Notes under the pieces: model-generated
Told to the model about the DNA's origin: nothing
The model's input: only the letters and a program-made list of their open reading frames with translations
The model's database searches: none
Program-made: the position numbers and the translations under genes
Source: Octopus sinensis
Lineage: Eukaryota
Direction: 5' to 3'
DNA: 64,000 bases
NCBI RefSeq assembly: GCF_006345805.1
Contig: NC_043014.1
Location: forward strand, 5,580,001-5,644,000
Shown here: positions 199 through 63,593 of the stretch, in pieces
Numbering within the stretch: position 1 is the first letter of the stretch
Layout of the letters: each line of letters starts with the position of its first letter

Positions 199-250
199 AA
201 CCGTTTCCTTTTCAAGAAATCTCTGGATGACAAAGCTGTTCACACGCCAA
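199..250 (+). CDS. Paralog 1, exon 2 (stalk, NRFLFKKSLDDKAVHTP), short-chain collagen C4-like family; exon 1 lies upstream of the window
   Basis: ttttttcacag acceptor at 197-198 and gtaaga donor at 251; 52 nt, phase 0 to 1; same length and homologous to the exons at 20124-20175 and 46289-46340. Confidence 0.85.
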
Positions 251-1017: not shown

Positions 1018-1092
1018 GACCCGGTCCTGGATCCCTGTATACCCGGTGGGGTAGAACAAAATGTCCACGTATTTCAAGTCTGGTATACGATG
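1018..1092 (+). CDS. Paralog 1, exon 3 (R-PGPGSLYTRWGRTKCPRISSLVYDG)
   Basis: cgcag acceptor and gttagt donor; 75 nt, phase 1-1; YxRWGRxxCP...LVYxG motif opens the short-chain-collagen-C4-type C-terminal domain. Confidence 0.9.
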
Positions 1093-2403: not shown

Positions 2404-2902
2404 GTGTGGTTGGTGGAACAGCGCATAACGAAACAGGCGGCGGAAGTAATCTCTTATGTCTACCTAACGACCCCATTTGGGCAATTACACTGGAGAAGCT
2501 ACATACTGGAGTCACATGTATGGCAGTGAATATGAAACACGAAATTCCTATGCGAAAAAATACTTTTCTTTTGCTAACGCTGAATCACTTTTTGATCACA
2601 ATGTTCCGTGTGCTGTCTGTTTGACACGACAACCTGCTGTTGTTATGATGTTACCAGCCAGGACAAAGTGTTACGATGGTTGGACGATTGAGTATTCAGG
2701 ATATTTGATGACCGAGTATCATAATCATAAAGGCAGACATGAATATGTGTGTGTGGACTATGCACCAGAAGCTGATCCAGCGGGTTACAGAAACGAGAAT
2801 GGAGCTTTATTATATTTTGTGAAGGGAATTTGTGGTTCATTGCCATGTCCACCGTATGTCTATGGTCGCATATTAACCTGCGTTGTGTGCAGTAAATATT
2901 GA
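2404..2902 (+). CDS. Paralog 1, terminal exon 4 (Cys-rich NC1-related domain), with an apparent 1-nt deletion at about 2479-2482
   Basis: ctag acceptor at 2402-2403. GVVGG..GGGSNLLCLPNDPIW is in one frame (ORF 2307-2624) and GNYT..CAVC..CVVCSKY* in another (ORF 2477-2902). Restoring one base gives an intact exon homologous to 50176-50666. Confidence 0.8.
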
Positions 2903-7780: not shown

Positions 7781-7927
7781 GTGTAGCTGGTGGACATTTC
7801 TCTGATCAAATGGGTGGTGGAAGTAATCTCTTATGTCTACCTAACGATCCCATTTGGGCCAATTATCTTATAGAGGTCGAAAAAGCCAGTGACATATTCG
7901 CTGGTGAATATCAGTTATCGACTTACA
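7781..7927 (+). pseudogene. Orphan, truncated copy of exon 4 (GVAGGHFSDQMGGGSNLLCLPNDPIWANYLIEVEKASDIFAGEYQLS)
   Basis: The upstream ~100 nt matches the intron end of paralog 1, but the acceptor reads ctcg instead of ctag. Homology stops where a Helitron begins (7928). No exon 2 or 3 copy was seen between 2902 and 7781. Confidence 0.85.
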
Positions 7928-8233
7928 TCTTTATATATAAAACTGAAGTTGTGTGTGTGAGAGTCTGTCTACTCCGATTTAGATTCCTAACTACTCCCAC
8001 ATTTTGCGGTTCAGTTTAACCAAAACCGGGTATCTTATAGTCGTGATTCATATCGAGCCCTTCTGGGTATTAGCGCGCGTCTACAATGAGTCTACGATTA
8101 AAAAAAAATTATCATCATTTTTCCGCATTTTAATGCGTTTTTTGCTCGGTTTATATAAGGGAAGTAACTCTCTAAAAATGCTTATATAGTTATTTCCCTT
8201 ACAAACCCGAGCAACGCCGGGCGATACTGCTAG
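7928..8233 (+). mobile_element. Non-autonomous Helitron (family H1)
   Basis: Inserted A|TC...CTAG|T; 5' TCTTTATATATAAA; 3' hairpin cccgagcaacgccggg just before CTAG. Confidence 0.85.
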
Positions 8234-8342
8234 TTCGAAAATAAAAACATGATGCATTTCTATGATGGTACGTCCATAGTGTTACAGACAGTTTGGTGGA
8301 CAATACTTTGAAGATGTCGACGGTAGATGCAATAATACGTAT

Positions 8343-8747
8343 ACTCTTTTACTCTTTACTCCTTTATTTGTTTCAGTCATTTGAGTGTGGCCATGCTGGA
8401 GCACCGCCATTAGTCGAGCAAGCCAACCCCAGGACTTATTCTTTGTAAGCCTAGCACTTATTCTATCGGTTTCTTTTGCCGAACCACTAAGTTACGGAGA
8501 CGTAAACACACCAGCATCGGTTGTCAAGCGATGTTGGGGGGTACAAACACAGAAACACAAACATATACACAGACACATGCACACATATATACGACGGGCT
8601 TCTTTCAGTTTCCGTCTACCAAATCCACTCACAAGGCTTTGGTTGGTCCGAGGCTATAGTAGCAGACACTTGCCCAAGGTGCCACGCAGTGGGACTGAAC
8701 CCGGAACCATGTGGTTAGTAAGCAAGCTACTTACCACACAGCCACTC
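8343..8747 (-). mobile_element. SINE type A (tRNA-like head, internal microsatellite, (AAGAGTA)n tail)
   Basis: Full consensus, shared by more than 12 copies in the window. Confidence 0.9.
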
Positions 8748-11272: not shown

Positions 11273-11515
11273 CATAAAAAATAATACCTGAGTGATGTTG
11301 AAAATATAGCATTTAAGGTAGTATATCATGCATCGAATGGCTATATTTCTCTTTGATATCATTCGCTATGATACCCATATTTCCAGTTCTTCTTGGCTCT
11401 CACACTCTCCCACTCTAGCGGAGCTGGCATTGAAGAAAGATATCCATGTACGATATTTGTTGAGTTTTGTTGTATGCAAAGAAAAGGAACACTATATTTT
11501 AAAATTAGATATCAC

Positions 11516-11521
11516 TTTATT
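11516..11521 (-). promoter_or_regulatory. Candidate polyA signal of gene A
   Basis: AATAAA on the minus strand, kept at the mirror position in gene B (50939-50944) although the flanks have diverged. Confidence 0.55.
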
Positions 11522-11788
11522 TCAGTATATAGATATATAACGATAAACAAAGCCTTACATAGTGTTTTTCAAGAATTATTCGCTGAGATTTACATCGTTC
11601 TGCTTGGATATCATTCTCGTTTCGAATACTTTTCTAAAAATTATATTGCTGCTTATTTTAACCATAAGCATAAATTGAATAAAATATCATGAAACAAAAT
11701 TACGTAATTATAAACTTTTCTTTGATATTATCACATGCAATTTTCCCATATACATTTTCAAATTGAAACGGATTCAGTTATGTTCTAT

Positions 11789-12279
11789 TCAGTATTTACT
11801 GCACACAACACAGCTTAATTCTTGGCCATTGACATACGGTGGACATGGCAATGAACCACAAACACCCTGAACGAAATACAATAAAGCTCCATTTTCGTTT
11901 CTGTAACCTGCTGGATCAGCTTCTGGTGCATGGTCAACGCATACATACTCTTCTCGGCCCTTGTGATCGTTGTGGGCTGTCATTAAATAACCGTAATACT
12001 CAATCGTCCAGCCAGGGTAACAGCGTGTTCTGGCTGGTAACATCATAACAACAGCAGGTTGTCGTGTCAAACAGACAGCGCACGGAACGTTGTGATCCTG
12101 AAGAGTTTTAGCGTTAGCTAAAGAAAATATATTAGCAACTGTTATCTCATATTCGCATCCATATATCTGAGCGGCCACTTCAAGCTCTGTAGTATAATTG
12201 GCCCAAATCGGATCATTTGGTAGACATAAGAAATTACTTCCACCACCAGGTTGGTCAAAGAACTGCCCACTAACCACAC
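11789..12279 (-). CDS. Gene A exon 4 (Cys-rich NC1-related domain, ends CVVCSKY*)
   Basis: ttccag acceptor (12281-12280); 491 nt; ORF 11789-12277. Confidence 0.93.
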
Positions 12280-12774
12280 CTGGAAATAGTAAGAATGTAT
12301 ACCAAATTTATTAATGAAAATTTATATATGAAATGACATTGATAAAAATTTATGTTTGTATCTCATAACCTACCCGAATCTTATGTATATGTTAGGGGAA
12401 CAGCAGAAGAAACAGAATATTTGTAACGAAAATATCAAAATTATGGAATATTGTATATAGTAAAGACTATCATACAACCATGATACAAACCTGAATTCAT
12501 ATGGAAACAACGGGTTTACGATTAACAATTTGGGATCCTAGGATGTCCTACATGCAAGAATCAGGAGAATTGAATGCAACATGTTGATGAATCTCTCTAT
12601 TATCATGTTATTTTCTATAGTTTTTCCACGTATTATTTGATAGGACACATCTCCACTGCAAATAGTATAAGTAGTATACCATCGATAAAAGTTTCGTTAG
12701 TTTACGGGGGTTAATTTAATTGGTCAAGAGATAAAAAAAAAATGGTCGGTATACACTATGAACAAATACAACAT

Positions 12775-13188
12775 AGGCGCAGGAGTGGCTGTGGGGTAAG
12801 TAGCTTGCTTACCAACCACATGGTTCCGGGTTCAGTCCCACTGCGTGGCACCTTGGGCAAGTGTTGTATACTATAGCCTCGGGCCGACTAAAGCCTTGTG
12901 AGTGGATTTGGTAGACGGAAACTGAAAGAAGCCCGTCGCATACATATATATATATATATATATATGCGTGTATGTTTGTGTGTCTGTGTTTGTCTCCCTA
13001 GCATTGCTTGACAACCGATGCTGATGTGTTTATGTCCCTGTCACTTAGCGGTTCGGCGAAAGAGACCGATAGAATAAGTACTGGGCTTGCAAAAAGAATA
13101 AGTCCCGGAGTCGAGTTGCTCGACTAAAGGCGGTGCTCCAGCATGGCCGCAGTCATATGACTGAAACAAGTAAAAGAGTAAAAGAGTA
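12775..13188 (+). mobile_element. SINE type A
   Basis: Full length. Confidence 0.92.
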
Positions 13189-13315
13189 TTGCTATACATA
13201 TGACACCGTACACAACGGGACTAGTTGTGACATTATAATGCAGGATTATAGTGAGTCATATTTAGGTTGAATTTTTATGATCCTTCTTCAGATATATTTA
13301 GAGTGATATTTGAAT

Positions 13316-13720
13316 TACTCTTTACACTTTTTACTCTTTTTACTTGTATCAGTCATTTGACTGCGGCCATGCTGGAGCACCGCCTTTAGTCGAGCAACTC
13401 GACCCCGGGGCTTATTCTTTTTGCAAGCCCAGTACTTATTCTATCGGTCTCTTTTTGCCGAACCGCTAAGTAACGGAGACGTAAACACACCAGCATCGGT
13501 TGTCAAGCAATGCTAGGGGGACAAAAATACACGCACATACATATATATACATATACACGACAGGCTTCTTTCAGTTTCCGTCTACCAAATCCACTCACAA
13601 AGCATTGGTCGGCCCGGGGCTATAGCAGAAGACACTAGCCCAAGATGCCACGCAGTGGGACTGAACCCGGAACCATGAGGTTGGTTAGCAAGCTACTTAC
13701 CACACAGCCACTCCTGCGCC
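13316..13720 (-). mobile_element. SINE type A
   Basis: Full length; inverted relative to 12775-13188. Confidence 0.92.
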
Positions 13721-14182
13721 TATATAAACACTTAGAAACATTTTTTTGTATATGTAGAAGAAAGGAAACTGTAACAGAGAGACAGGTTACGTAGGTCGCT
13801 TTGTATGTGGGAGAAAAAGGCTGCAAACTTGAAAATGGTTCAAACGTAAAAAACGCAGAATTTTCCTTTCGTAAGCTGCAGCAGTTTGAGAAATCGACAA
13901 TTTTTACCATTCTTTATCTGTATTGTCTATCCAGTGGCGTATGCTAGGGTAAACTGTACAACCGAAACTGCAAACGCCTAAGTCTGGATAGTTTGAAGAA
14001 AAGAAAATTTCCCTGTTTTTTTCTTCGCTGATTACGTCTCATTTTTGGAGAGACCTACACAGACCCTTTTCTTTTACCATTGTTATTCCCTTAAATTATG
14101 CCTCGTTTCTGTCGTTTTCCCACCTATTCTTTATTCCTATTGCTTAACTCTTGGCATATGCAAGGGTAAACTGTGCATTGGA

Positions 14183-14558
14183 TACTCTTTTACTTGTTTC
14201 AGTCATATGACTGCGGCCATGCTGGAGCACCGCCTTTAGTCGAGCAAATCGACCCCGGGACTTATTCTTTTGTAAGCCCAGTACTTATTCTATCGGTCTC
14301 TTTCGCCGAACTGCTAAGTGACGGGGACATAAACACACCAGCATCGGTTGTAAAGCAATGCAAGGGGGACAAACACAGACACACAAACACACACACACAC
14401 ATATATACATATACATATATACGACGGGCTTCTTCCAGTTTCCGTATACCAAATCCACTCACAAGGCTTTGGTCAGCCCGAGGCTATAGTAGACAACACT
14501 TGCCCAAGGTGCCACGCAGTGGGACTGAACCCGGAACCATGTGGTTGGTAAACAAGCT
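14183..14558 (-). mobile_element. SINE type A
   Basis: Near full length; the head abuts (TATG)n. Confidence 0.9.
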
Positions 14559-14599
14559 GTATGTATGTATATATGTATGTATGTATATATGTATGTATG

Positions 14600-14633
<34 letters not shown>

Positions 14634-14736
14634 TGTATGTATATATTATGTATGTATGTATGTATGTATATATTATGTATGTATGTATGTATGTATATAT
14701 TATGTATGTATGTATGTATGTATATATGTATGTATG

Positions 14737-14770
<34 letters not shown>

Positions 14771-14840
14771 TGTATGGTGCATCAGCATGGCCGCAGCTCT
14801 GAGCTGAAACTGGAGAGAGAAAAAATACATCCAGACTTAA

Positions 14841-14906
<66 letters not shown>

Positions 14907-15689
14907 GTGTTTGTGTCTCTGTGTGTGTGCGCGCGCGCGTGTGTGTGTGTATGTATATATACGCACATTCGAATATATACACGAAGCGATACATTCCCTT
15001 TCTACACCACTCTTTACTTTCTGTTATCTCGTTTTGGTACGCCTCCTTCTATTGTTCAATGTAACTCGGTTAGCGACCACACACTTTCCTTTTCCCTCTT
15101 CTTTATCCCTTTCCCTTCGAGTTGAATTAACGTTTATATTTGTTCACTTACAATGTCGGAGACTTACATTTTGAGGTTTTTTATACTCGTCTGCTCCTTT
15201 ATTGTATCAACCATGATAAGAAAGAAGATAATACTGAGTTGAAAAACAGGACGTAAATACCTGAGAACTAAACACTTAATTTTTTCTGATGCGCACACGA
15301 TTCATGCAATTCGTTGAGTTATTTATATCAGCAAGGAATTTGAGGGAAAGATGCAGTTGATTATATCCTCTGCTATACATGATCGGTACTTTATTTTATC
15401 CTCGAGTAATATGAAAGGCAAATTTAACTTGAGTGGGACTTCAATTGAATATATAATAGGTTAACAGTTACGCAAGGCATATGCGAAAGCTATAAATATT
15501 TTAGGTTGTCAGAAGAGTTTAAACTGAGAGAAGAGGACAGATTGGGTCGCAAAAATCTTGTAAAAATGTCTAAGAAACAAAGCCATTCCCCCAAGAAAAA
15601 CTGAAATATTATCATATTAAATTAGAAAGAAAGTCCGATTACGCTTTTGATACGATCATTTAAGGATCCTTTTTCAATATTTGCATTCT

Positions 15690-15928
15690 CTTACTCTTTA
15701 CTCTTTTACTCTTTTACTTGTTTCAGTCATTTGATTGCGGCTATGCTGGAGCACCGCCTTTAGTCGAGCAAATTGACCCCGGGACTTATTCATTGTAAGC
15801 CCAGTACTTATTCTATCAGTCTCTTTTGCAGAAACCGCTTACTTACGGGGACGGAATCACAACAAGCATCGGTTGTTAAGAGATATTGGGGGGACAAGCA
15901 TAGACACACAAACTCACACACACACACG

Positions 15929-15964
<36 letters not shown>

Positions 15965-16103
15965 CGATGGGCTTCTTCCAGTTTCCGTCTACCAAATCCA
16001 GTCACAAGGCTTTGGTCGGCCCGAGGCTGTAATAGAAGACACTTGCCCAAGGTGCCACGCAGTGGGACTGGACCCTGAACCATGATTTTGGTAAGGAAGC
16101 TAC
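15690..16103 (-). mobile_element. SINE type A
   Basis: Near full length. Confidence 0.88.
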
Positions 16104-16167
16104 TCTATTTCAAAAATATTGACATTAAGGCAAGATACAGAGTTGCTTGCGGGCTGGACAGAAACAT

Positions 16168-16579
16168 TACTCTTTACTCTTTTATTTGTTTCAGTCATTT
16201 GACTGCGGCCATGCTGGAGCACCGCCTTTAGGCGAGCAAATCTACCCCGGGACTTATTCTTTGTAAGCCCAGTACTTATTCTATCGGTCTCTTTTGCCGA
16301 ACCGCTAAGTGACGGGGACGTAAACACACAAGCATCGGTTGTCAAGCAATGCTAGGGGGACAAACAGAAACACACAAACATATACACACACACTTATATA
16401 TATATATACATATATACGACAGGCTTCTTTCAGTTTCCGTCTACCAAATCCACTCACAAGGCATTGGTCGGCCCGGGGCTATAGCAGAAGACACTTGCTC
16501 AAGATGCCACGCAGTGGGACTGAACCCGGAACCATGTGGTTGGTTAGCAAGCTACTTACCACACTGCCACTCCTGCGCC
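16168..16579 (-). mobile_element. SINE type A
   Basis: Full length. Confidence 0.92.
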
Positions 16580-16619
16580 TCATTGATGAGATGATTGATG
16601 AAATGGGTCCTTTTCTTTG

Positions 16620-17692: not shown

Positions 17693-17767
17693 CATCATAT
17701 ACAAGATCTGAATAGGGGGGACAGGTAGTTCTACCCCACCGGGTATACAGTGATCCGAGACCGGGTT
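17693..17767 (-). CDS. Gene A exon 3 (K-PGLGSLYTRWGRTTCPPYSDLVYDG)
   Basis: ttttacag acceptor and gttagt donor; 75 nt; homologous to 1018-1092 and 48510-48584. Confidence 0.9.
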
Positions 17768-18090: not shown

Positions 18091-18561
18091 AGGCGCAGGA
18101 GTGGCTGTGTGGTAAGTAGCTTGCTAACCAACTACATGGTTCCGGGTTCAGTCCCACTGCGTGGCACCTTGGGCAAGTGTCTTCTACTGTAACCTCGGGC
18201 CGACCAAAGCCTTGTGAGTGGATTTGGTAGACGGAAACTGAAAGAAGCCCGTCGTATATATGTATATATGTATGCGTGTGTGTGTTTGTGTGTCTGTGTT
18301 TGCCCCCCTAGCATTGCTTGACAACCGATGCTGGTGTGTTTATGTCCCCGTTATTTTGCAGTTCGGCAAAAGAGACCGATAGAATAAGTACTGGGCTTAC
18401 AAAAGAATAAGTCCCGGGGTCGATTTGCTCGACTAAAGGCGGTGCTCCAGCATGGCCGCAGTCAAATGACTGAAACAAGTAAAAGAGTAAAGAGAGAGTA
18501 AGAGTATATGTATGTGTGTTTGTGTGTCTGTGTTTGTCCCCCTAGCATTGCTTGACAACCG
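18091..18561 (+). mobile_element. SINE type A plus a partial repeat
   Basis: Full length to about 18502, then a repeated internal segment. Confidence 0.9.
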
Positions 18562-20123: not shown

Positions 20124-20175
20124 TTGATGTGTCATCAGGTTTATCATCGAGAGATTTCTTGGAGACGAAACGGTT
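20124..20175 (-). CDS. Gene A exon 2 (NRFVSKKSLDDKPDDTS)
   Basis: tttcacag acceptor and gtaaga donor; 52 nt; identical to 46289-46340. Confidence 0.88.
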
Positions 20176-31325: not shown

Positions 31326-31469
31326 TTGTTCTGATTTCTCTTCCATTTTCCTTATCCTTGAATCTTGGTGAAGAACCGTTATGGTGAGAATGAGAACTAA
31401 TCCGAAAGCTACGAGAGAAGAAATGGAAAAACGTTGCGAAACGTTCCTGGACAGCTGAGAGAAATCCAT
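31326..31469 (-). CDS. Gene A exon 1 (MDFSQLSRNVSQRFSISSLVAFGLVLILTITVLHQDSRIRKMEEKSEQ): N-terminal anchor
   Basis: ATG at 31469; 48 codons ending at a gtgagt donor; one hydrophobic stretch; conserved in three copies in the window. Confidence 0.88.
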
Positions 31470-35077: not shown

Positions 35078-35131
<54 letters not shown>

Positions 35132-35269
35132 TACATTCGTGTGTGTGTGTGTTACTGTTCTATATTTACTGAAAGCAAGAGGATGTATCAGCGGAAACGT
35201 TGTGTTAACAACAAACAAGAAGAGGACGAATATCCGTCAAATGTAAATAATGTAAATAATGTAAATAAT

Positions 35270-35574
35270 ATATGTATGTATGTATGTGTGTATATATGTA
35301 TGTATGTATGTATGTATGTAGGTAGGTAGGTATGTATGTAAGTATGTATGTATATATGTATGTATATATGTATGTATGTATATATGTATGTATGTATATA
35401 TGTATGTATGTATGTACGTATATATGTATGTATATATGTATGTATATATGTATGTATGTATATATGTATGTATGTAAGTATGTATGTATATATGTATGTA
35501 TTTATGTATGTATATATGTATGTATGTATGTATGTATATATGTATGTATGTACATATGTATGTATGTATGCATG

Positions 35575-35608
<34 letters not shown>

Positions 35609-36010
35609 TGTATGTATATAAATATGTATGTATGTATATATATATGTATGTATGTATGTATATATGTATGTATGCATGTATGTGTGTATATATGTATGTA
35701 TGTATGTATGTATGTAAGTATGTATGTATGTATATATGTATGTAAGTATGTATGTATGTATATATATATGTCTCCCTCTATCCTCCCTCCTCCCCTCCCC
35801 TCCTCTTCTCCTCTCCTTCCTTTTCCCCCCTCCTCTTCTCCTCTCCTTCCTTCTCCCCCTCCCTCCCCCTCCTCTTCTCCCCTTTCCTTCTCCCCTCTTC
35901 TCCCCTTTCCTTCTCCCCTTTCTTCTCCCCTCTTCTCCCCTTTATTTCTCCCCTCCCCCCTCCCATTTCCTTCTCCCCCTTACCTCCCCCCTCTTCTCCT
36001 CTCTCTACAC
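35270..36010. repeat. (TATG)n array followed by a polypyrimidine tract
   Basis: Seen directly. Confidence 0.9.
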
Positions 36011-36462
36011 TACACCATACGACTTTACACATCACATCATATATACATACACACGTCTAGACCTCTCATACGCACTAATACTCTCTCATACACACACACA
36101 CACACTCTTCTCATACACACACACACTCTTATGTTTGAGCGGGGGTCATTTAACCCTATTATCTCCCCTAATTTCGCTCTTGCGTCTCATGTTTGATCTT
36201 TGACTTCTGGCCGAAATCAGATCGCCATGTTGATTCGCTAGCTTTTGCACGCATATTTTTTTCTCTCCTTCTTTCTGTGTTTTTTTTCTCTGTGTATCTT
36301 TCTGTTGAAGAGCGTAGGCTCGAAACGTTAAAGACTTGTTTCATTTATATTTCCTGAGCGCCATACTAATACAATTGTTTGTTTGTATTCCACCTGCCTT
36401 CGTCTTTTGTTTATTTCCGTAAACCTGCCTTCGTCTTTTGTGTATTTTCATAAAGCTTACCG

Positions 36463-36529
<67 letters not shown>

Positions 36530-36607
36530 CATATGTATGTATGTATATATGTATGTACGTAAGTATGTATGTATATATGTAGGTATATATGTATGTATAT
36601 ATGTATG

Positions 36608-36641
<34 letters not shown>

Positions 36642-36789
36642 TGTATGTATGTATGTATGTATGTATGTATGTATGCATGTATATATGTATGTATGCATGT
36701 ATGTATGTATGTATGTATATATGTATGTATGCATGCATGTGTGTATATATGTATGTATGTATGTATATATGTATGTATGTAAGTATGTA

Positions 36790-37900
36790 TGTATGTATAT
36801 ATGTATGTATATATGTGTGTATGTATGTATATATATATGTATGTATGCATGCATGTATATGTGGATGTATGTATGTATGTATGTATGTATATATGTATGT
36901 ATATATGTGTGTATGTATGTATATATATATGTATGTATGCATGCATGTATATGTGGATGTATGTATGTATGTATGTATGTATATATGTATGTATATATGT
37001 GTGTATGTATGTATATATATATGTATGTATGCATGCATGTATATGTGGATGTATGTATGTATGTATGTATGTATATATGTATGTATATATGTGTGTATGT
37101 ATGTATATATATATGTATGTATGCATGCATGTATATGTGGATGTATGTATGTATGTATGTATGTATATATGTATGTATATATGTGTGTATGTATGTATAT
37201 ATATATGTATGTATGCATGCATGTATATGTGGATGTATGTATGTATGTATGTATGTATATATGTATGTATATATGCGTGCGTATGTATGTATATATATAT
37301 GTATGTATGCATGCATGTATATGTGGATGTATGTATGTATGTATGTATGTATATATGTATGTATATATGTGTGTATGTATGTATATATATATGTATGTAT
37401 GCATGCATGTATATGTGGATGTATGTATGTATGTATGTATGTATATATGTATGTATATATGTGTGTATGTATGTATATATATATGTATGTATGCATGCAT
37501 GTATATGTGGATGTATGTATGTATGTATGTATGTATATATGTATGTATATATGTGTGTATGTATGTATATATATATGTATGTATGCATGCATGTATATGT
37601 GGATGTATGTATGTATGTATGTATGTATATATGTATGTATATATGTGTGTATGTATGTATATATATATGTATGTATGCATGCATGTATATGTGGATGTAT
37701 GTATGTATGTATGTATGTATATATGTATGTATATATGTGTGTATGTATGTATATATATATGTATGTATGCATGCATGTATATGTGGATGTATGTATGTAT
37801 GTATGTATGTATATATGTATGTATATATGTGTGTATGTATGTATATATATATGTATGTATGCATGCATGTATATGTGGATGTATGTATGTATGTATGTAT
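36790..37900. repeat. 92-bp minisatellite built from TATG/TA microsatellite, 12 units
   Basis: The marker gtgga recurs at 36861, 36953, 37045, 37137, 37229, 37323, 37415, 37507, 37599, 37691, 37783 and 37875. Confidence 0.92.
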
Positions 37901-38744
37901 GTATGTACGTATGTATATGTATGACTTAAACGACATGCAAAGGTACATGAAGCCCAGTTGCAACTACAGCCGGCTATTACCAGTAAAGGCTTTGGCTGCC
38001 AATTTTGTACAAGACATTGTAGATCTTTAGCTGGGCTAAAAAGTCTCATTCGATCACAGCACCAGTAACAGTTAAGCTTCGTGCAATGGCCATACTCGAT
38101 AACGAGGGGGCAGCCATAAAATGTATGTATGTATGTATGTGTATATTTATATATGTATGTATATATGAAGGTATGTATGTACGTATATGTGTATGTATGT
38201 ATGTATGTATACATGTATGTATGTTAGTATGTATGTATGTATGTATGCGTGCGTATGTATGTATGTATATATGTATCTATGTATGTATATATGTATGTAT
38301 GTATGTATGTAAGTATGTATGTAAGTATGTATGTATGTAAGTATGTAAGTATGTATGTATATATGTATGTATGTATGCGTGCGTATGTATGTATGTATAT
38401 ATGTATGTATGTATGTATGAATATATGTATTTATGTAAGTATGTATGTAAGAATGTATGTATGTATGTAAGTAAGTATGTATGTATGTGTATATGTATAT
38501 ATGTATGTATGTATGTATATATGTATATATGTATGTATGTATGCATATATGTATGTATGCATGTATGTATGCATGTATGTATGCATGTATGTATATATGT
38601 ATGTATGTGTGTGTACATATATAGAACAATGTCTATCCAATCACAAAAACCTGTCATTTACAAGTATACATCCACACTTTTTGGTTATAGTTTTCCCATT
38701 GGTTTACGAATTCACGAAAAGATTTTCGGCAGAGCTGGGTTCCA

Positions 38745-38914: not shown

Positions 38915-39058
38915 ATGGATTTCTCTCAGCTGTCCAGGAACGTTTCGCAACGTTTTTCCATTTCTTCTCTCGTAGCTTTCGGATTAGTTCTCATTCTCAC
39001 CATAACGGTTCTTCACCAAGATTCAAGGATAAGGAAAATGGAAGAGAAATCAGAACAA
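38915..39058 (+). CDS. Gene B exon 1 (N-terminal anchor; identical to gene A exon 1)
   Basis: ATG at 38915 and gtgagt donor at 39059. Missing from the ORF track because the unspliced ORF is only 55 aa. Confidence 0.88.
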
Positions 39059-41494: not shown

Positions 41495-41563
41495 TTTTGC
41501 CCTATTTTTAGATTTAATTTTTTTCTGTTTGCATTATGTGCTTGACATGGGTAAAAATGGCAT

Positions 41564-41756
41564 TACTCTTTTTACTCTCTTTTACTTGTTTCAGTCATTT
41601 GACTGCGGCCATGCTGGAGCACCGCCTTTAGTCGAGCAAGTCGACCCCGGGACTTATTCTTTGTAAGCCCAGTACTTATTCTATCGATCTCTTTTGCCAA
41701 ACACACCAGCATCGGTTGTCAAGCAATGCTAGGGGGACAAACAGACACACAAACAT

Positions 41757-41809
<53 letters not shown>

Positions 41810-41973
41810 TACGACAGGCTTCTTTCAGTTTCCGTCTACCAAATCCACTCACAAGGCATTGGTCGGCCCGGGGCTATAGCAGAAGACACTTGCCCAAGAT
41901 GCCACGCAGTGGGACTGAACCCGGAACCATGTGGTTGGTTAGCAAGCTACTTACCACACAGCCACTCCTGCGC
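41564..41973 (-). mobile_element. SINE type A
   Basis: Full length, nested in a Helitron. Confidence 0.9.
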
Positions 41974-42744
41974 CTATATTGTGTTAAAGGCTAAAATTTT
42001 AACTTTCATTTGCATCATGAACCGTCAAAAGATATCAGAAAGAGTATCAAATTTCACAAAATTTTAAGTAATTTTGAATTATTTTTTGTGATTATAAGTG
42101 CACGCGTAAGAGAAAGCGAGGGAGAGTCCAAGAGAAAGGAAGCGTACGATAGTGGGAAAGTGAGAGAGAAAGGAGAGAGAAACAAAGAGGGAGAATGTGG
42201 TGATAAGAAACAGAAAGGAAGCAACAGAAAATAACAACCACACCTTCACCCGCGCGTAGAGCGGGTCACCTTAAGCTAGTATTGTATACAATTTTGAGTA
42301 AATATTCGGTTTAACCGGGAATATAAGCAGGAATTTAAAATATAGAATGGTGGTAAAATAAGACAAGACGTTCGACCCTGTCATAAGCATAAGCAAAGTT
42401 TTATACGAATCTAAAAATTTAGTTTACCCCCTGTATTTGTATTAACAGATAGCTGGTAATATATTTTGCCCAATCCCTCATCAAGAAGCATGCATACATA
42501 ATAGATACATACATACATGCCGTTGTGGAAAGATACCGACCACCCTCATGTGACTAAAAGTGAACTGCGATGGTTCTACTAAATAGACAATTGTCAGGTC
42601 TTATGCAGTTCGGGTTGGTTAAACAGTTCACAGTGAACCGTGATTGAAAGTTGAGTCTCGTGTAACATTAATAGTAGTACGTTGTGTCTATACTTTCTGA
42701 CCCATTGCTTCGTTGATGTATATATCCAATACAAAGATATATAG

Positions 42745-44592
42745 CATGCATGCATACACACACACATACATACTTAGATACATACATACATACATACATA
42801 CATACATACATACATACATACATACATACATACATGCAGGCATACATACATACATACATACCTACATACATACATACCTACATAGAGACATACATACATA
42901 CCTACATACATACATACATACATACATACATACATACATACATACATACCTACATACCTACATACATACATTCATACACACATACCTACATACATACATT
43001 CATACATACATACATACATACGTACATACATACATACATACATACATACATACATACATACATACATACATACATACATACATACATACATACCTACATA
43101 CATACATACCTACATACATACCTACATACATACATACAGACATACATACATACCTAGATACATACCTACATACATACATACCTACATACATACATACATA
43201 CATACATACATACCTACCTAGATACATATATACATACAGACATACCTACATACATACATACATACATACATACCTAGATACATACATACATACCTACATA
43301 CAAAGATTCATACACACATACCTACATACATACATACATACCTATATACATACATACATACATACATACATACATACCTACCTAGATACATATATACATA
43401 CAGACATACCTACATACATACATACCTACATACATACATACATACATACATACATACATACATACATACCTAGATACATACCTACATACCTACATACATA
43501 CATTCATACACACATACCTACATACATACCTACATACATACATACATACATACATACATACATACATACATACATACATACACACATACATACATACATA
43601 CCTACATACAGACATATATACATACCTAGATACATACATACATACATACAAACATACATACATACATACCTACATACCTACATACATACATTCATACATA
43701 CATACCTACATACATACATTCATACATACATCCATACAAACATACATACCTACATACATACATACATACATACCTACATACATGCCTACATACATACATA
43801 CATACATACATACATACCTACATACATACATACCTACATACATACATACATACATACATACCTACATACATACATACATACATACATGCAGACATACATA
43901 CATACATACATATATACATATATACATACCTAGATACATACATACATACAGACATACCTACATACATACATACATACATACACATACAGACATACATACA
44001 TACATACATACATACATACAGACAGACATACATACCTACCTACATACATACATACATACATACATACATACATACCTAGATACATACATACATACATACA
44101 TTCATACATACATACATACATGCATACATACCTACATACATTCATACATACATACATATATACATACCTACATACATACATACCTAGATACATACATACA
44201 TACCTACATACATACATACATACATACATACTTACATACCTACATACATACATGCATATATACCTACATACATACATACCTACATACATACCTACATACA
44301 TATATACATACATACATACCTACATACATATATACCTACATACATACATACCTACCTACATACATACATACATAATACATACATACATACATACATACAT
44401 ACATACATACCTACATACATACATACATACATACATACCTAGATGCATACATACATACATACCTACGTAATACATACATACATACCTAGATACATACATA
44501 CCTACATACATACATACATACATACATACATACATGCATACATACATACATACATACCTACATACATACATATATACATACATACATACATA
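42745..44592. repeat. (TACA)n degenerate tetranucleotide array
   Basis: Seen directly. Confidence 0.95.
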
Positions 44593-46288: not shown

Positions 46289-46340
46289 AACCGTTTCGTC
46301 TCCAAGAAATCTCTCGATGATAAACCTGATGACACATCAA
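46289..46340 (+). CDS. Gene B exon 2 (NRFVSKKSLDDKPDDTS)
   Basis: tttcacag acceptor and gtaaga donor; 52 nt. Confidence 0.88.
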
Positions 46341-46754: not shown

Positions 46755-47501
46755 TAAAACTCTTAAGACAAAGTAATTTGAAGAAATGTTCGGGAACCTC
46801 ATTAGGTATCATAAAATATTTAGCTTTCAGTTCTACAGTGTTCAGCCAAACTAGTCTCCTCCGCGACTGACTTCTAGTCCCTTCAACATCGGATTGGTTT
46901 TTCATTATTATCCCTATCTGCTCAATGAAATACAGAAGGTTTAGCTGCTTACTAAAACATTTTCTACTTTGCAATAATTTCCATAATATAAACTAATGCT
47001 ATTATGCTGTACAAATAAATGTTTATACGTGTACCTGAGCAAGGCTACGTCGATATTTATTAGTACCTTTGAATATGATTATGAGAAAAACATCAGACAG
47101 GTATTTTCAATTCAGTTATGAAGGTAAGATAGAAAATAAGTATAAAGAAATGTGGAGTGCATCCTGAAATGAATTTGTAAAGGAAAATAGATAACATTAT
47201 ATGTAAAAAATGAACAAAATATTAATATATATTTGTGCATGCACGTGTGTGTATGACGTGTGTTTGCGTGTGGGGTGTGTCTATTTATATATGTATATCT
47301 GTATATGTGTGTATATATATTTATATATATTAATATATATACGTTGAACCGCTTATATATCAAACACATCAAAATATAATTACATTGTTAATCATTCGAT
47401 ATCAAAGGTTTAATAAACCTGATTTGGTCTCATTTTAGATTCTAAAAGATGGTAAATATTCTAAAGTCCATTTGTATGATATCATTTCTATTTTTTCTCA
47501 G

Positions 47502-47531
47502 AACCGTTTCGTCTCTAAGAAATCTCTCGAT
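47502..47531 (+). pseudogene. Truncated duplicate of exon 2 within gene B intron 2
   Basis: ttttttctcag then AACCGTTTCGTCTCTAAGAAATCTCTCGAT, followed by TA-rich sequence with an in-frame TAA and no donor; preceded by ~170 nt of duplicated intron. Confidence 0.75.
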
Positions 47532-48509: not shown

Positions 48510-48584
48510 AATCCGGTCCCGGATCACTGTACACCCGGTGGGGTAGAACGACCTGTCCACCTTATTCAGAGCTTGTATATGATG
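48510..48584 (+). CDS. Gene B exon 3 (K-SGPGSLYTRWGRTTCPPYSELVYDG)
   Basis: ttttacag acceptor and gttagt donor; 75 nt. Confidence 0.9.
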
Positions 48585-49903: not shown

Positions 49904-50175
49904 CAATAACAGGTAACACTAACAGGTAAGACGTCGCAGAATTCTAAATTGTTAATCACAAACTAGTTGTTTCATATAAATTCAGGTTTGTATTATGATT
50001 GTATAATAGCCCCTACTATATTCCATAATTTTGATATTTTCATTACAAATATTCCATTTCTTCCTCCATTCAGTTAACTTATTTTACAAAAGATTCAGGA
50101 ACGTTATGAAATTCAAGAATTAATTTTTATCATGTTTTTTCATATTTATTTTGTATATGTTCTTACCATTTCCAG

Positions 50176-50666
50176 GTGTGGTTGGTGGGCAGTTCTATGA
50201 CCAACCTGGTGGTGGAAGTAATTTCTTATGTCTACCAAATGATCCGATTTGGGCCAATTATACTACAGAGCTTGAAGTGGCCGCTCAGATATATGGATGC
50301 GAATATGAGATAACAGTTGCTAATATATTTTCTTTAGCTAACGCTAAAACGCTTAATGACCACAACGTTCCGTGTGCTGTCTGTCTGACACGACAACCTG
50401 CTGTTGTTATGATGTTACCAGCCAGAACACGCTGTTACCCTGGCTGGACGATTGAGTATTACGGTTATTTAATGACAGCCCACAACGATCACAAGGGCCG
50501 AGAAGAGTATGTATGCGTTGACCATGCACCAGAAGCTGATCCAGCAGGTTACAGAAACGAAAATGGAGCTTTATTGTATTTCGTTCAGGGTGTTTGTGGT
50601 TCATTGCCATGTCCACCGTATGTCAATGGCCAAGAATTAAGCTGTGTTGTGTGCAGTAAATACTGA
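50176..50666 (+). CDS. Gene B exon 4 (Cys-rich NC1-related domain)
   Basis: ttccag acceptor at 50174-50175; 491 nt; ORF 50151-50666. Confidence 0.93.
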
Positions 50667-50938
50667 ATAGAACATAACTGAATCCGTTTCAATTTGAAAA
50701 TGTATATGGGAAAATTGCATGTGATAATATCAAAGAAAAGTTTATAATTACGTAATTTTGTTTCATGATATTTTATTCAATTTATGCTTATGGTTAACAT
50801 AAGCAACATTATAGCTGTTTAAAATAGTATTCCAAACGAGAAGAGTATCTATCTAAAGCGAAGGATGCAAACCTCAATGAATGATTCTTGAAAAGCATTA
50901 TATAAGCTTTTGTTTATCTACATATATTTATATACTGA

Positions 50939-50944
50939 AATAAA
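50939..50944 (+). promoter_or_regulatory. Candidate polyA signal of gene B
   Basis: AATAAA about 270 nt after the stop, mirrored in gene A. Confidence 0.55.
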
Positions 50945-51174
50945 ATGATATCTAATTTTAAAAGACAGTGTCCTCTTTGTATAAATATATTACAAAACCC
51001 AACTAATATCATACATGCTATGTGTCATGCATAATCTCATAATTAAAAAAAGTGTTAATACTTGGAACGAATCGGATTCAGAGTAATACTAATACAGTGA
51101 GTGACCATTCTACCCACAATTCGGAAACAAAATACTCGATATCTCAAAAAATAAGTCCTCCCATCTGCTGGATG

Positions 51175-52403: not shown

Positions 52404-52593
52404 GTACTCTTTACTCTCTTTTACTTGTTTCAGTCATTTGATTGCGGCCATGCTGGAGCACCGCCTTTAGTCGAGCAAATCGACCCCGGGACTTATTCTT
52501 TGTAAGCCCGGTACTTATTCTATCGGTCTCTTTTGCCGAACTGCTAAGTGGCAGGGACGTAAACATGCCAGCATCGGTTGTCAAACAGACACA

Positions 52594-52692
<99 letters not shown>

Positions 52693-52856
52693 TACAACAG
52701 GCTTCTTTCAGTTTCCGTCTACCAAATCCACTCACAAGGCATTGGTCGGCCCGGGGCTATAGCAGAAGACACTTGCCCAAGATGAAAAGCAGTGGGATTG
52801 AACCCGGAACCATGTGGTTGTTAAGCAAGCTACTTACCACACAGCCACTCCTGCGC
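52404..52856 (-). mobile_element. SINE type A
   Basis: Full length. Confidence 0.92.
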
Positions 52857-53240
52857 CAAGAGTTGGAAGTAATTTTGTTGTTTCATTAAAAACTTAGCTT
52901 CCGGCACAATAGTACTTTTCACGTTCCATATTCCTGAATTTATCAGTGTAAACGAAACTCACATTCGCTTTCCTGTTTATCGTTATACTGTTTCTTCTCA
53001 TATTTCAAAAGTAGCACTTGTATATACAACTTGACGGTAAAATGTTAGAGTATTTGTATATATTGAACTGCTCCCCCCCCCCTCTAACCAGATCACTAGC
53101 AGTAACAGCTGCAGCAACGCTCAACTTAGCTGACAACTTCTTCCTCTGCGTCTCAGTTTCCCGTCCGTTTTCTTAAGATATTATGTAAACTTCATTTCCG
53201 CTTTAGAAAACCAAAAATCTAATTTTTATAAATAAGAAAT

Positions 53241-53601
53241 AGGCGCAGGAGTGGCTGTGTGGTAAGTAGCTTGCTTACCAACCACATGGTTCCGGGCTCA
53301 GTCCCACTGTGTGGCATCTTGGGTAAGTGTCTTCTGCTATAGCCCCGGGTCGACCAATGCCTTGTGAGTGGATTTGGTAGATGGAAACTGAAAGAAGCCT
53401 GACGTATATATGTATATATATATATACATATTTATAGGCGCAGGAGTGGCTGTGTGGTAAGTAGCTTGCTTAACAACCATATGGTTCCGGGTTCAGTCCC
53501 ACTGTGTGACATCTTGGGCAAGTGTCTTCTGCTATAGCCCCGGGCCAACCAATGCCTTGTGAGTTGATTTGGTAGACGGAAACTGAAAGAAGCCTGACGT
53601 A

Positions 53602-53646
<45 letters not shown>

Positions 53647-53878
53647 ATATGTTTGTGTGTCTGTGTTTGTCCCCCTAGCATTGCTTGACAACCGATGCCG
53701 GTGTGTTTATGTCCCCGTCACTTAGCGGTTCGGCAAAAAAGAGACCGATAGAATAAGTACTGGGCTTACAAAAGAATAAGTCTCGGGGTCGAGTTGCTCG
53801 ACTAAAGGCGGGTGCTCCAGTATGGCCGCAGTCAAATGACTGAAACAAGTAAAAGAGTAAAAAGAGTAAAAAGAGTAT
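53241..53878 (+). mobile_element. SINE type A with a tandemly duplicated 5' half
   Basis: Heads at 53241 and 53437. Confidence 0.9.
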
Positions 53879-54124
53879 ACTTTGTGCAATATACTGATAT
53901 TTTCAAATGTAATAAAATTACGAAATGACACATTTTTTTATACGGTGTGGTAATTAACATCATTAAATCTAATTATCAATTCACCAAAATGTGGGTTTTC
54001 TGGGTCAGAAATTCACTGTTTACTACACTCAATAAGATTCAGCAGTCCGATTGGTTACTTATTAACGCTGCTTTTGTCAGTTCATATAAACTAGTCTTCG
54101 AGTTTAATGAGGTTTTATTTTAGA

Positions 54125-54521
54125 CTAGCAGTATCGCCCGGCGTTGCTCGGGTTTGTAAGGGAAATAACTATAAAGCATTTTTAGAGAGTTATAGCCCAA
54201 AAGTAGCAAAAAATGCATTAAAAATGGAAAAAAAATTATGGTAAATGTTTTTTTTTTAATCGTTGACTCATCGTAGACATTTTTAGAGAGTTACTTCCCT
54301 TATATTTAAAAAAATATGCCTTAAAATGGAAAAAAAATGATGGTAAATTATTTTTAAAATCGTAGACTCATCGTAGACGCGCGCTAATACCCAGAAAGGC
54401 TCGATATGAATCACGACTATAAGATACCCGCTTTTGGTTAAACTGCATCGCAAAATGTGGGAGTAATTAGGAATCTAAATCGGAGTAGACAGACACACAA
54501 CCTTTCTTTTATATATAAAGA
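54125..54521 (-). mobile_element. Non-autonomous Helitron H1
   Basis: CTAG, hairpin and TC termini. Confidence 0.85.
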
Positions 54522-54757
54522 TTTAACAATTCTTAAATATTTACAGTAGAGCATCTTGTGTTGAATTATACCCACATAATCCTGCAAAGAACTGCTGGAG
54601 TACCACGTTGAAACTGAATATTCTAACCAGGTAAAGGCTCTTTTTCATCTCAGGCGTATTCTTGGCATACAGTGTGTAATTTTAGTATTTCTGTTTCTGA
54701 ACCAGTGAGATATCTTCAAGGCTTTCTTAACATGCATGACAAGAGAGTTATAGAAAA

Positions 54758-55055
54758 CTAGCAGTATCGCCCGGCGTTGCTCTGGTTTGTAAGGGAAATA
54801 ACTATATAAGCATTTTAGAGAGTTACTTCCCTTATATAAAACCGAGTAAAAAATGCATTAAAAATAAGAAAAAATGATGGTAATTTTTTTTAAATCGTAG
54901 ATTCATAGTAGACGCGCGCTAATACCCAGAAGGGCTCGATATGAATCACGACTATAAGATAGTTTGGTTAAACTGCACCACAAAATGTGGGAGTAGTTAG
55001 GAATCTAAATCGGAGTAGACAGACTCTCACACAACTTCAGTTTTATATATAAAGA
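54758..55055 (-). mobile_element. Non-autonomous Helitron H1
   Basis: CTAG, hairpin and TC termini. Confidence 0.85.
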
Positions 55056-55059
55056 TATA

Positions 55060-55560: not shown

Positions 55561-55639
55561 ACCAGTATCAATCAATCAAGTCTCTTCCAGACGCTTTTTT
55601 CATTCTGAAATTCCTGGATTATAGTCACAAATGTATCGC

Positions 55640-56789: not shown

Positions 56790-56820
<31 letters not shown>

Positions 56821-57110: not shown

Positions 57111-57130
57111 ATGCATATATGTGTATATAT

Positions 57131-58132: not shown

Positions 58133-58276
58133 ATGGATTTCGCAAAACTGGCCAGGAATATTTCGCAACGTTTATCCATGTCTTCACTCATAGCTTTTGG
58201 AATACTGCTCATTCTGACCATAACGATTCTTAACCAAGATTTAAGAATGAGGAAAATGGAAGAGAAATCAGAACAA
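58133..58276 (+). CDS. Exon 1 of a further paralog, gene C (MDFAKLARNISQRLSMSSLIAFGILLILTITILNQDLRMRKMEEKSEQ); remaining exons not in the window
   Basis: Same 48-codon length, same gtgagt donor, mostly conservative substitutions relative to A/B, and a homologous 5' UTR (ctccagcttagatcta...). Confidence 0.82.

Positions 58277-63562: not shown

Positions 63563-63593
<31 letters not shown>

What the first reader, a model, noticed from the sequence alone, without database searches (positions are those of the whole stretch)
2404..2620. Hypervariable blocks within a conserved Cys framework across paralogs
Seen: the invariant GGGSNxLCLPNDPIW is flanked by three different sequence sets. Block 1: TAHNET (paralog 1), QFYDQP/QFFDQP (B/A), HFSDQM (dead exon). 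Block 2: GNYTGEATYWSHMYGSEYETRNSYAKKY versus ANYTTELEVAAQIYGCEYEITVANI (3 aa shorter) versus ANYLIEVEKASDIFAGEYQLS. A third patch is EYHN versus AHND. The C-terminal 97 aa of paralog 1 and B differ at only 15 positions. Inference: these are surface loops under diversifying selection, as in immune or allorecognition receptor families.
Basis: partly seen in the sequence, partly recalled or inferred. Interest (0 to 1): 0.7.

Follow-up and report, generated by a model that had tools for sequence, protein, structure and literature searches.

The report
Variable loops in octopus NC1-like genes
The flagged stretch is the start of the last exon of one (frameshifted) copy in a tandem cluster of octopus "short-chain collagen C4-like" genes, whose collagen-IV-NC1-like domain carries three fast-evolving loops on a cysteine framework that gene conversion keeps uniform; a few loop codons show signs of positive selection, but nothing links the family to immunity.

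Summary
Four copies of an exon encoding GGGSNxLCLPNDPIW lie in the window, and the three variable blocks and the "15 differences in 97 aa" check out. The genes belong to the known spongin short-chain collagen ("short-chain collagen C4-like") family. The domain folds like collagen IV NC1. The octopod members have no collagen helix and carry an N-terminal hydrophobic anchor.

The blocks map to loops of a confident AlphaFold model. They are also the most variable, indel-prone positions in other phyla. Site models still find about 7 loop codons with ω≈3, and this replicates in 17 independent genes (p=8e-7). A per-site test that allows synonymous-rate variation keeps only 2 block codons and 1 framework codon.

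Recombination is strong. Block and framework trees conflict, and A and B share a 412-nt identical tract. The pattern therefore mixes tolerant loops, concerted evolution of the framework and probably limited positive selection. The immune/allorecognition reading has no support. Partner-specificity loops, as in collagen IV NC1, are the better analogy.

The parts
199..250 (+). P1 exon 2 (stalk, NRFLFKKSLDDKAVHTP); exon 1 lies off the left end of the window
   Evidence: tblastn with N-termini of Octopus homologues and splice sites read from the sequence
1018..1092 (+). P1 exon 3: start of the NC1-like domain (PGPGSLYTRWGRTKCPRISSLVYD + first base of the Gly codon)
   Evidence: AG acceptor at 1016-1017, GT donor at 1093-1094
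2404..2902 (+). P1 exon 4 (the finding): rest of the NC1-like domain up to the stop codon; the frame is broken by a 1-nt deletion
2418..2435 (+). Block 1 in P1 (TAHNET), in the loop after strand 85-95 of the model; contains an N-E-T sequon
2436..2480 (+). Invariant GGGSNLLCLPNDPIW (includes the family-invariant Cys109 of P0001 numbering)
2481..2483 (+). Site of the 1-nt deletion (GC + AAT instead of GCC AAT), which frameshifts P1
   Evidence: all 21 other copies are intact here
2483..2563 (+). Block 2 in P1 (NYTGEATYWSHMYGSEYETRNSYAKKY), 3 aa longer than in A and B
2714..2725 (+). Block 3 in P1 (EYHN), in the loop after strand 182-191 of the model
7781..7922 (+). Dead exon-4 fragment (47 codons): splice acceptor AG changed to CG, and homology ends where an interspersed repeat (7923-8235) begins
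11789..12279 (-). Gene A exon 4 (block 1 at 12265-12248, block 2 at 12202-12128, block 3 at 11977-11966)
17693..17767 (-). Gene A exon 3
20124..20175 (-). Gene A exon 2
31326..31469 (-). Gene A exon 1 (Met, hydrophobic anchor, start of the stalk)
38915..39058 (+). Gene B exon 1, head-to-head with gene A
46289..46340 (+). Gene B exon 2
48510..48584 (+). Gene B exon 3
50176..50666 (+). Gene B exon 4 (block 1 at 50190-50207, block 2 at 50253-50327, block 3 at 50478-50489)
50386..50797 (+). 412-nt tract perfectly identical between B and A (a second tract of 153 nt lies at 50198-50350): gene-conversion tracts
58133..58276 (+). Exon 1 of a further family member (gene C, 96% identical to the O. bimaculoides P0002 N-terminus); the rest lies off the window

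Best explanation
The window comes from an Octopus chromosome and carries part of a tandem cluster of four-exon genes of the spongin short-chain collagen ('short-chain collagen C4-like') family. The octopod version has lost the Gly-X-Y helix. It consists of an N-terminal hydrophobic anchor, a short stalk and one collagen-IV-NC1-like domain held by 10 conserved cysteines.

The flagged blocks are three loops between beta-strands of that domain. I think three processes produce the pattern. (1) These loops are structurally tolerant in the whole family, so they change about 3.4 times faster than the rest and take indels. (2) The framework is under purifying selection (omega about 0.07-0.3) and is also homogenised among neighbouring paralogues by gene conversion, which sharpens the contrast. 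(3) After duplications a handful of loop codons (about 7; P0001 residues 97, 125, 128, 137, 138, 193, 195) were probably driven apart by positive selection (omega about 3), giving each paralogue lineage its own loop signature. That signature then changes only at about the neutral rate or slower between close species.

By analogy with collagen IV, where NC1 is the module that selects which chains assemble, I infer that the loops set partner or ligand specificity of each paralogue. That functional step is inference only. Paralog 1 itself is frameshifted in this assembly: either a very young pseudogene or an assembly indel.
For: Family and fold:
- 967 homologues, named short-chain collagen C4(-like) by the sources; the best is O. 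bimaculoides at 94%.
- The top 39 PDB fold matches are all collagen IV NC1 (E down to 4.5e-6, probability 1.0).
- The literature defines spongins as collagen IV variants with an NC1 domain.
- 7 invariant and 3 near-invariant cysteines.
- No Gly-X-Y run in 32/32 octopod proteins; a hydrophobic 19-mer near residue 15.

Loops:
- Model pLDDT 88.8; the blocks fall between strands.
- The same positions are the most variable, and carry the indels, in other phyla (2.39 vs 1.47 bits, p=4e-6, rho=0.58).

Rates:
- M0 omega 0.72-0.77 in the blocks vs 0.30 in the framework; tree length 10.2 vs 3.0.

Positive selection:
- M2a vs M1a LRT 88 on the full alignment.
- LRT 23.6 on the blocks' own tree.
- LRT 28.1 in 17 independent intact genes, and 16.7 without the indel-adjacent columns, with the same sites.
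- In the P1-like recent duplicates block dN is 0.24-0.43, above the exon-wide dS of 0.06-0.17 (Fisher p 0.001-0.02) and above the flank divergence of 5-11%.

Gene conversion:
- Blocks and framework reject each other's trees (AU p=0.004 and 7e-6); PHI p=0.0045.
- O. bimaculoides copies cluster by species in the framework but by lineage in the blocks.
- A and B share identical 412-nt and 153-nt tracts within 81.7%-identical surroundings.

Lineage signatures:
- The P1 blocks recur almost unchanged in O. sinensis L005:18050 (blocks 95.5% nt, blocks 1 and 3 identical).

NC1 as recognition module: Fidler 2017, PMC5395295.
Against: - Block-wide omega is below 1.
- With a per-site synonymous rate, only 2 block codons (columns 8 and 37) and 1 framework codon (column 88) remain significant. 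The synonymous rate is itself about 2.5 times higher in the blocks, as expected if conversion rather than selection creates much of the contrast.
- M2a-type tests are known to give false positives under recombination, which is present.
- The three blocks were concatenated on one tree, so recombination among them is not controlled.
- The data cover one exon, 17-21 sequences and NEB posteriors only.
- No 3D coordinates were available, so exposure and clustering are inferred from secondary structure.
- There is no evidence at all on binding partners, oligomeric state or expression. One proteomic peptide of a family member in O. vulgaris ink shows only that some member is translated.
Confidence: 0.55

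Rival explanations
1. There is no adaptive diversification. The blocks are simply unconstrained loops drifting near-neutrally. The 'conserved framework' is exaggerated by concerted evolution (gene conversion) among tandem paralogues, and the site-model signal is a false positive caused by recombination, synonymous-rate heterogeneity and multi-nucleotide changes.
For: - Block omega is 0.72-0.77, not above 1.
- Pairwise block omega is 0.4-1.1 in the L003 and L004 arrays.
- The synonymous rate is raised 2.5-fold in the blocks, and only 3 FEL sites survive.
- The partitions have incongruent trees, and the PHI test is significant.
- A and B share a 412-nt conversion tract.
- The same loops are variable and indel-rich in all phyla.
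Against: - M2a remains strongly favoured when the blocks are analysed on their own tree with their own branch lengths, in an independent sequence set, with the same codons each time.
- In the P1-like duplicates block dN exceeds both exon-wide dS and the divergence of the non-coding flanks, which pure drift does not predict.
- About a third of block codons are under strong constraint (omega about 0.1), so the loops are not simply free.
Confidence: 0.3
2. One reading: the family is an immune or allorecognition receptor repertoire whose loops are kept hypervariable by pathogen- or self/non-self-driven diversifying selection.
For: - The family is a tandemly expanded, membrane-anchored or secreted Cys-framework family with variable, glycosylation-sequon-bearing loops.
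- Some loop codons have omega about 3.
Against: - The family is an ECM-type NC1-like family found from sponges to amphioxus.
- Loop variability is family-wide rather than octopus-specific.
- Close orthologues keep the loops (W_P1 vs Osi_5_18050: blocks 1 and 3 identical, block omega 0.9 on 5 changes; B vs O. bimaculoides: block omega 0.77), so there is no sign of a continuing arms race.
- Block-wide omega is below 1.
- The literature searches gave no octopus immune link: only transcriptome mentions in other phyla and one ink-proteome peptide.
Confidence: 0.07
3. The pattern is an artefact: it comes from reading across frames or a pseudogene, or from misalignment around the indel in block 2.
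For:
- Block 2 contains a 3-aa indel.
- Two copies in the comparison are dead (the W_dead fragment and the O. bimaculoides pseudo-exon with an in-frame stop).
Against: - The same blocks are variable among 17 intact genes from outside the window and in 25 database octopod proteins.
- The signal survives removal of the indel-adjacent columns and the pseudogenes.
- Downstream of the frameshift P1 keeps every conserved Cys, and its framework omega is 0.23 against its closest relative.
Confidence: 0.03

Closest known systems
Spongin short-chain collagens (SSCC; 'short-chain collagen C4', Exposito 1991; Aouacheria 2006; Fidler 2017 PMC5395295)
   Same: There is clear sequence homology of the C-terminal domain (E about 1e-51 to cnidarian and sponge members that carry Pfam Collagen repeats). 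The framework has 10 cysteines (7 invariant and 3 near-invariant). There is no HSQ motif (read from the sequence). The taxonomic spread matches: invertebrates other than ecdysozoans, plus cephalochordates.
   Different: The octopod genes have no Gly-X-Y collagenous domain at all (0/32). Instead they have an N-terminal hydrophobic anchor and a short stalk, so the database name 'collagen' is a misnomer for them. They are also expanded into large tandem arrays: 14 intact last exons in 247 kb of O. sinensis.
Collagen IV NC1 domain (Pfam C4, PF01413; PDB 1LI1, 1M3D, 1T60/1T61, 5NAX-5NB2, 8TYS)
   Same: It is the same fold by Foldseek: the top 39 hits all have probability 0.72-1.0. The literature treats the spongin NC1 as homologous. 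In collagen IV, NC1 is the recognition module that selects chains for trimerisation, which offers a mechanistic analogy for paralogue-specific loops.
   Different: There is no detectable sequence match to Pfam C4 or to any PDB chain, even with a 92-sequence profile. TM-scores are modest (0.33-0.46). The domain has 10 rather than 12 cysteines. According to Fidler 2017 it lacks the domain-swapping region. It has no triple helix to nucleate.
Tandem multigene families with variable loops on a conserved framework, shaped by gene conversion plus positive selection
   Same: The family is arranged in tandem arrays. Its exon is a mosaic with incongruent histories and conversion tracts. A small class of loop codons has omega >1.
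   Different: Block-wide omega is below 1. There are no polymorphism or expression data. The loop signatures are kept between close species. No immune domain or signalling motif was seen.

Membership tests
Spongin short-chain collagen family | C-terminal NC1-like domain homologous to named members | tested here: met
   967 hits at E<=1e-3, including Exaiptasia, Amphimedon, Branchiostoma and coral 'short-chain collagen C4(-like)' proteins at E about 1e-51 over 97-99% of the query.
Spongin short-chain collagen family | Conserved cysteine framework (7 Cys shared with collagen IV plus 3 spongin-specific; Fidler 2017) | tested here: met
   C81, C109, C157, C160, C177, C204 and C247 are invariant and C231, C236 and C250 are >=90% conserved across 92 sequences. 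All are present in P1, A and B.
Spongin short-chain collagen family | Short collagenous (Gly-X-Y) domain N-terminal to NC1 | tested here: not met
   0 of 32 octopod proteins have a run of >=5 Gly-X-Y; exons 1-3 of A and B encode an anchor and a stalk only. Among the other phyla 19/88 have such a run, but the search's length filter disfavours long members.
Spongin short-chain collagen family | Absence of the HSQ motif of collagen IV NC1 | tested here: met
   No HSQ tripeptide occurs in the spliced B product (read directly from the sequence).
Collagen IV NC1 (Pfam C4 PF01413) | Match to the Pfam C4 model | tested here: not met
   no C4 hit for B, for the P1 piece, or for any of 92 family members, even at E<=1.
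Collagen IV NC1 (Pfam C4 PF01413) | NC1 fold | tested here: met
   Foldseek against PDB; ranks 1-39 are all collagen IV NC1 chains, with E from 4.5e-6 and TM 0.33-0.46.
Collagen IV NC1 (Pfam C4 PF01413) | Sequence similarity to solved NC1 chains | tested here: not met
   phmmer and a profile hmmsearch against all PDB sequences gave 0 hits at E<=10.
Collagen IV NC1 (Pfam C4 PF01413) | Trimer/hexamer assembly and sulfilimine (Met93-Lys211) cross-link | not testable with these tools
   This needs a residue-level structural alignment or biochemistry; the fold search returns no residue alignment.
   Block-wide omega is 0.72-0.77. About 7 codons have omega about 3 in site models. Only 2 block codons remain in the FEL-type test, and recombination is present.
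   No population data were available. Close orthologues keep blocks 1 and 3 identical.
   The only octopus mention found is one peptide in the ink proteome.
   Model coordinates are not exposed. Secondary structure only shows that all the sites lie in loops.

The most novel reading that the evidence does not exclude
Octopods have turned the ancient NC1 'chain-selection' module into a collagen-less, membrane-anchored multigene family. In this reading, positively selected loop residues encode a combinatorial code of homo- or heterophilic partner choice at the cell surface or in the matrix (a recognition-code family expanded by tandem duplication), while gene conversion maintains the scaffold.
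Probability: 0.12. Interest if true: 0.75.

Novelty: new variant of a known kind. Interest (0 to 1): 0.4.

Why it matters
If the loop code is real, it would give a function to a large and so far unstudied octopod gene expansion. It would also show that the NC1 recognition module, which Fidler 2017 reported as a stand-alone gene only in ctenophores, has been reused without its collagen helix in lophotrochozoans. Practically, the result corrects a misleading database name ('collagen'). It flags a frameshifted copy that may be an assembly error. It also shows that dN/dS claims for this family must be made with recombination-aware methods.

Tried and rejected
- The repeat finder on the whole window was swamped by microsatellites, so I replaced it with a self-BLAST.
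- Single-sequence and profile searches against Pfam and PDB sequences found nothing for the domain. The link to NC1 rests on fold and literature only.
I used the 94%-identical, same-length orthologue P0001 instead.
- P0014 is not on record, and the P0012 gene is too long for its DNA to be returned.
- One script call returned no answer, but its files had been written.
- IQ-TREE does not report or separately fix omega, so I wrote my own GY94 engine and validated it against IQ-TREE (M0 lnL -4114.83 vs -4114.825).
- I first took O. bimaculoides P0008 as the P1 orthologue, and the apparent block omega of 1.55 looked like fast evolution. That was rejected once O. sinensis L005:18050 proved far closer in blocks and flanks.
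- Pairwise NG86 between distant window paralogues is saturated in the blocks and is uninformative.
- Literature searches for NC1 hypervariable or variable regions gave nothing usable.
- The founding paper (Aouacheria 2006) is not held.
- No database protein matches the P1 pieces exactly, so neither the species nor the reality of the frameshift could be settled.

Full report
**What is there.**
The window is eukaryotic: about 36% GC, many microsatellites and short exons. The motif GGGSN[LF]LCLPNDPIW occurs four times:
- P1, 2404-2902 (+)
- a truncated copy, 7781-7922 (+)
- gene A, 12279-11789 (-)
- gene B, 50176-50666 (+)

Each is the last exon of a four-exon gene. The upstream exons were located with homologue N-termini, and the splice sites were read from the sequence.
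- Gene A (-): exons at 31469-31326, 20175-20124, 17767-17693 and 12279-11789.
- Gene B (+): exons at 38915-39058, 46289-46340, 48510-48584 and 50176-50666.
- P1 (+): exons 2-4 at 199-250, 1018-1092 and 2404-2902; exon 1 is off the window.
- A fifth gene, C, contributes only exon 1 (58133-58276).

**Check of the observation.**

One thing was missed. A DNA alignment of the four copies, and later of 22 copies, shows that P1 alone has lost one base right after the W codon: GC at 2481-2482, where every other copy has GCC or GGC. P1 is a very young pseudogene or an assembly indel. Downstream of the break it keeps all the cysteines and shows framework omega 0.23 against its closest relative. Intact close relatives exist in O. 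vulgaris and O. sinensis.

The 'dead exon' call is right. Its acceptor AG has become CG. Homology stops at 7922, exactly where an interspersed repeat begins. No exon 3 lies upstream of it.

**What the genes are.**
The spliced B product finds 967 homologues, which the sources name 'short-chain collagen C4(-like)'. The best is O. bimaculoides at 94%. There are dozens of Octopus and Argonauta paralogues, and members in bivalves, nemerteans, annelids, echinoderms, hemichordates, amphioxus, cnidarians and sponges. This is the spongin short-chain collagen family, described as a collagen IV variant with an NC1 domain, seven cysteines shared with collagen IV, three of its own, and no HSQ motif (Fidler 2017, PMC5395295).

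By sequence, the link to collagen IV is not detectable here:
- no Pfam C4 hit for any of 92 members, even at E<=1
- no PDB hit, even with a profile

By fold it is clear. An AlphaFold2 model of the orthologue P0001 (pLDDT 88.8) has collagen IV NC1 chains as its top 39 PDB matches (E from 4.5e-6; TM 0.33-0.46).

The octopod proteins do not have the collagen helix that defines spongins (0/32). They have a hydrophobic 19-mer near residue 15, a helical stalk, and then the NC1-like domain. A type II membrane anchor or an uncleaved signal peptide is my inference. One family peptide was reported in the O. vulgaris ink proteome (PMC10142993).

**Where the blocks sit.**
In P0001 numbering:
- Block 1 is residues 96-101, in the loop after strand 85-95.
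- Block 2 is residues 117-141: a loop, the short strand 130-134, and another loop.
- Block 3 is residues 192-195, in the loop after strand 182-191.

A conserved N-Y-T sequon opens block 2, and the P1 lineage adds N-E-T in block 1. Both fit exposed extracellular loops.

The same positions are the most variable in 64 proteins from other phyla (2.39 vs 1.47 bits, p=4e-6; Spearman 0.58 with the octopod profile), and they carry the family's indels. Loop tolerance is therefore a property of the fold, not an octopus innovation.

**Is it diversifying selection?**
I fetched the O. bimaculoides loci (L001, L002) and three O. sinensis loci (L003-L005), and harvested 20 complete last exons plus the window copies.

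*Orthologue pairs.* B or A against O. bimaculoides P0001 gives framework omega 0.08 and block omega 0.8-0.9, on 6-7 non-synonymous and 2 synonymous changes.

My first choice of P1 orthologue (P0008) gave block omega 1.55, not significant. It was the wrong partner. O. sinensis L005:18050 has 98.5% identical 3' flanks and carries the P1 blocks almost unchanged (blocks 1 and 3 identical, 3 aa changes in block 2). The blocks are lineage signatures that persist between close species.

*Recent tandem duplicates of the P1 type.* Block omega is 0.9-2.6. Block dN (0.24-0.43) significantly exceeds exon-wide dS (Fisher p 0.001-0.02) and the 5-11% flank divergence. In the other arrays block omega is 0.4-1.5.

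The framework gives 0.30. The blocks evolve 3.4 times faster.

*Site models.* My GY94 engine reproduces IQ-TREE's M0 likelihood.
- Full alignment: M2a beats M1a (LRT 88; 6.6% of sites at omega 4.1). Seven of the eight sites with P>0.8 lie in the blocks: columns 6, 34, 37, 46, 47, 105 and 107. The eighth is column 88.
- Blocks' own tree: LRT 23.6.
- 17 intact genes from outside the window: LRT 28.1, or 16.7 after dropping indel-adjacent columns, with the same sites.

*Caveats.* A FEL-type test with a per-site synonymous rate keeps only columns 8, 37 and 88 at p<0.01. The synonymous rate is itself about 2.5 times higher in the blocks.

Recombination is demonstrable:
- Block and framework data reject each other's trees (AU 0.004 and 7e-6), and PHI gives p=0.0045.
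- O. bimaculoides copies group by species in the framework tree but by lineage in the block tree.
- Inside the window, A and B share perfectly identical tracts of 412 and 153 nt within 81.7%-identical surroundings.
- O. bimaculoides has a single gene where the window has the A/B inverted pair.

Gene conversion thus contributes to the 'conserved framework', and it can inflate site-model tests.

**Conclusion.**
The pattern is real and has three layers: tolerant loops, a constrained framework homogenised by conversion, and probably positive selection on a handful of loop codons after duplication.

The immune or allorecognition reading is not supported by anything I could test. The family is ECM-type. 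The loops are variable in all phyla. Close orthologues keep them. No octopus immune link appeared in the literature I searched.

The best available mechanistic analogy is collagen IV itself, where NC1 is the recognition module that selects chains for assembly. Paralogue-specific loops could set partner or ligand specificity. That step is inference.

I could not test whether the sites cluster on one face, because model coordinates are not exposed. I also could not test polymorphism or expression.

Noticed in passing
window 2481-2483: P1 has a 1-nt deletion right after the invariant W codon, and all 21 other copies are intact there. It is either a young pseudogene or an assembly indel in a GGGCC context. 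Intact close relatives exist in O. vulgaris (P0020) and O. sinensis (P0021, L005:18050).
   Followed up: partly
window 7781-8235: The dead exon-4 fragment has its splice acceptor mutated from AG to CG. It is cut off after 47 codons by an interspersed repeat (7923-8235) that has copies near 19.7, 46.5, 54.3-55.1 and 60.7-61.5 kb.
   Followed up: yes
window 11445-12531 and 49946-51017: Genes A and B form a head-to-head inverted pair with patchy identity (82-99%). Exon 4 and the proximal 3'UTR contain identical runs of 412 and 153 nt within 81.7%-identical flanks, which indicates recent gene conversion. O. bimaculoides has only one gene at this position.
   Followed up: yes
window 47499-47531: An extra partial copy of exon 2 (QNRFVSKKSLD) lies inside intron 2 of gene B.
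   Followed up: no
window 53694-57122 and 60164-63607: A 3.4-kb direct repeat (94% identical) flanks exon 1 of gene C (58133-58276). It may be a local tandem duplication or a large element.
   Followed up: no
window 12764-16581 (also 8335-8747, 18091-18508, 41554-41982, 52405-53880): A roughly 410-bp interspersed repeat occurs in at least 12 copies in both orientations. Six sit in intron 3 of gene A, which accounts for that intron being 5.4 kb against 1.6 kb in gene B.
   Followed up: partly
window 35130-37920 and 43140-44374: Two long microsatellite arrays (copy spacing 8 or 12 nt) lie in opposite orientation, with strong and opposite GC skew (+0.39 and -0.44). They sit between gene A and gene B and in intron 1 of B.
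   Followed up: no
window 2483-2491, 50256-50264; alignment: An N-glycosylation sequon, N-Y-T, is conserved at the start of block 2 in nearly all copies. The P1 lineage has an additional N-E-T sequon inside block 1.
   Followed up: partly
window 50298-50300 (B), 12157-12155 (A): There is an eleventh, unpaired cysteine inside block 2 (IYGCEYE) in A, B and O. bimaculoides P0001. Several O. sinensis paralogues have a different extra Cys (EKCGY). These could form intermolecular disulfides.
   Followed up: no
L002 34566-35063 and 28316-28429; L001 22469-22660; L005 55782-56000: The O. bimaculoides and O. sinensis arrays also contain dead last exons (an in-frame stop, truncations and a degenerate fragment), so gene death is common in this family.
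   Followed up: partly
proteins P0001-P0120: Most retrieved lophotrochozoan members, not only the octopod ones, lack Gly-X-Y repeats and have an N-terminal hydrophobic segment. 'Short-chain collagen' is therefore a misnomer for much of the family. Fidler 2017 reported NC1-only genes only in ctenophores.
   Followed up: partly
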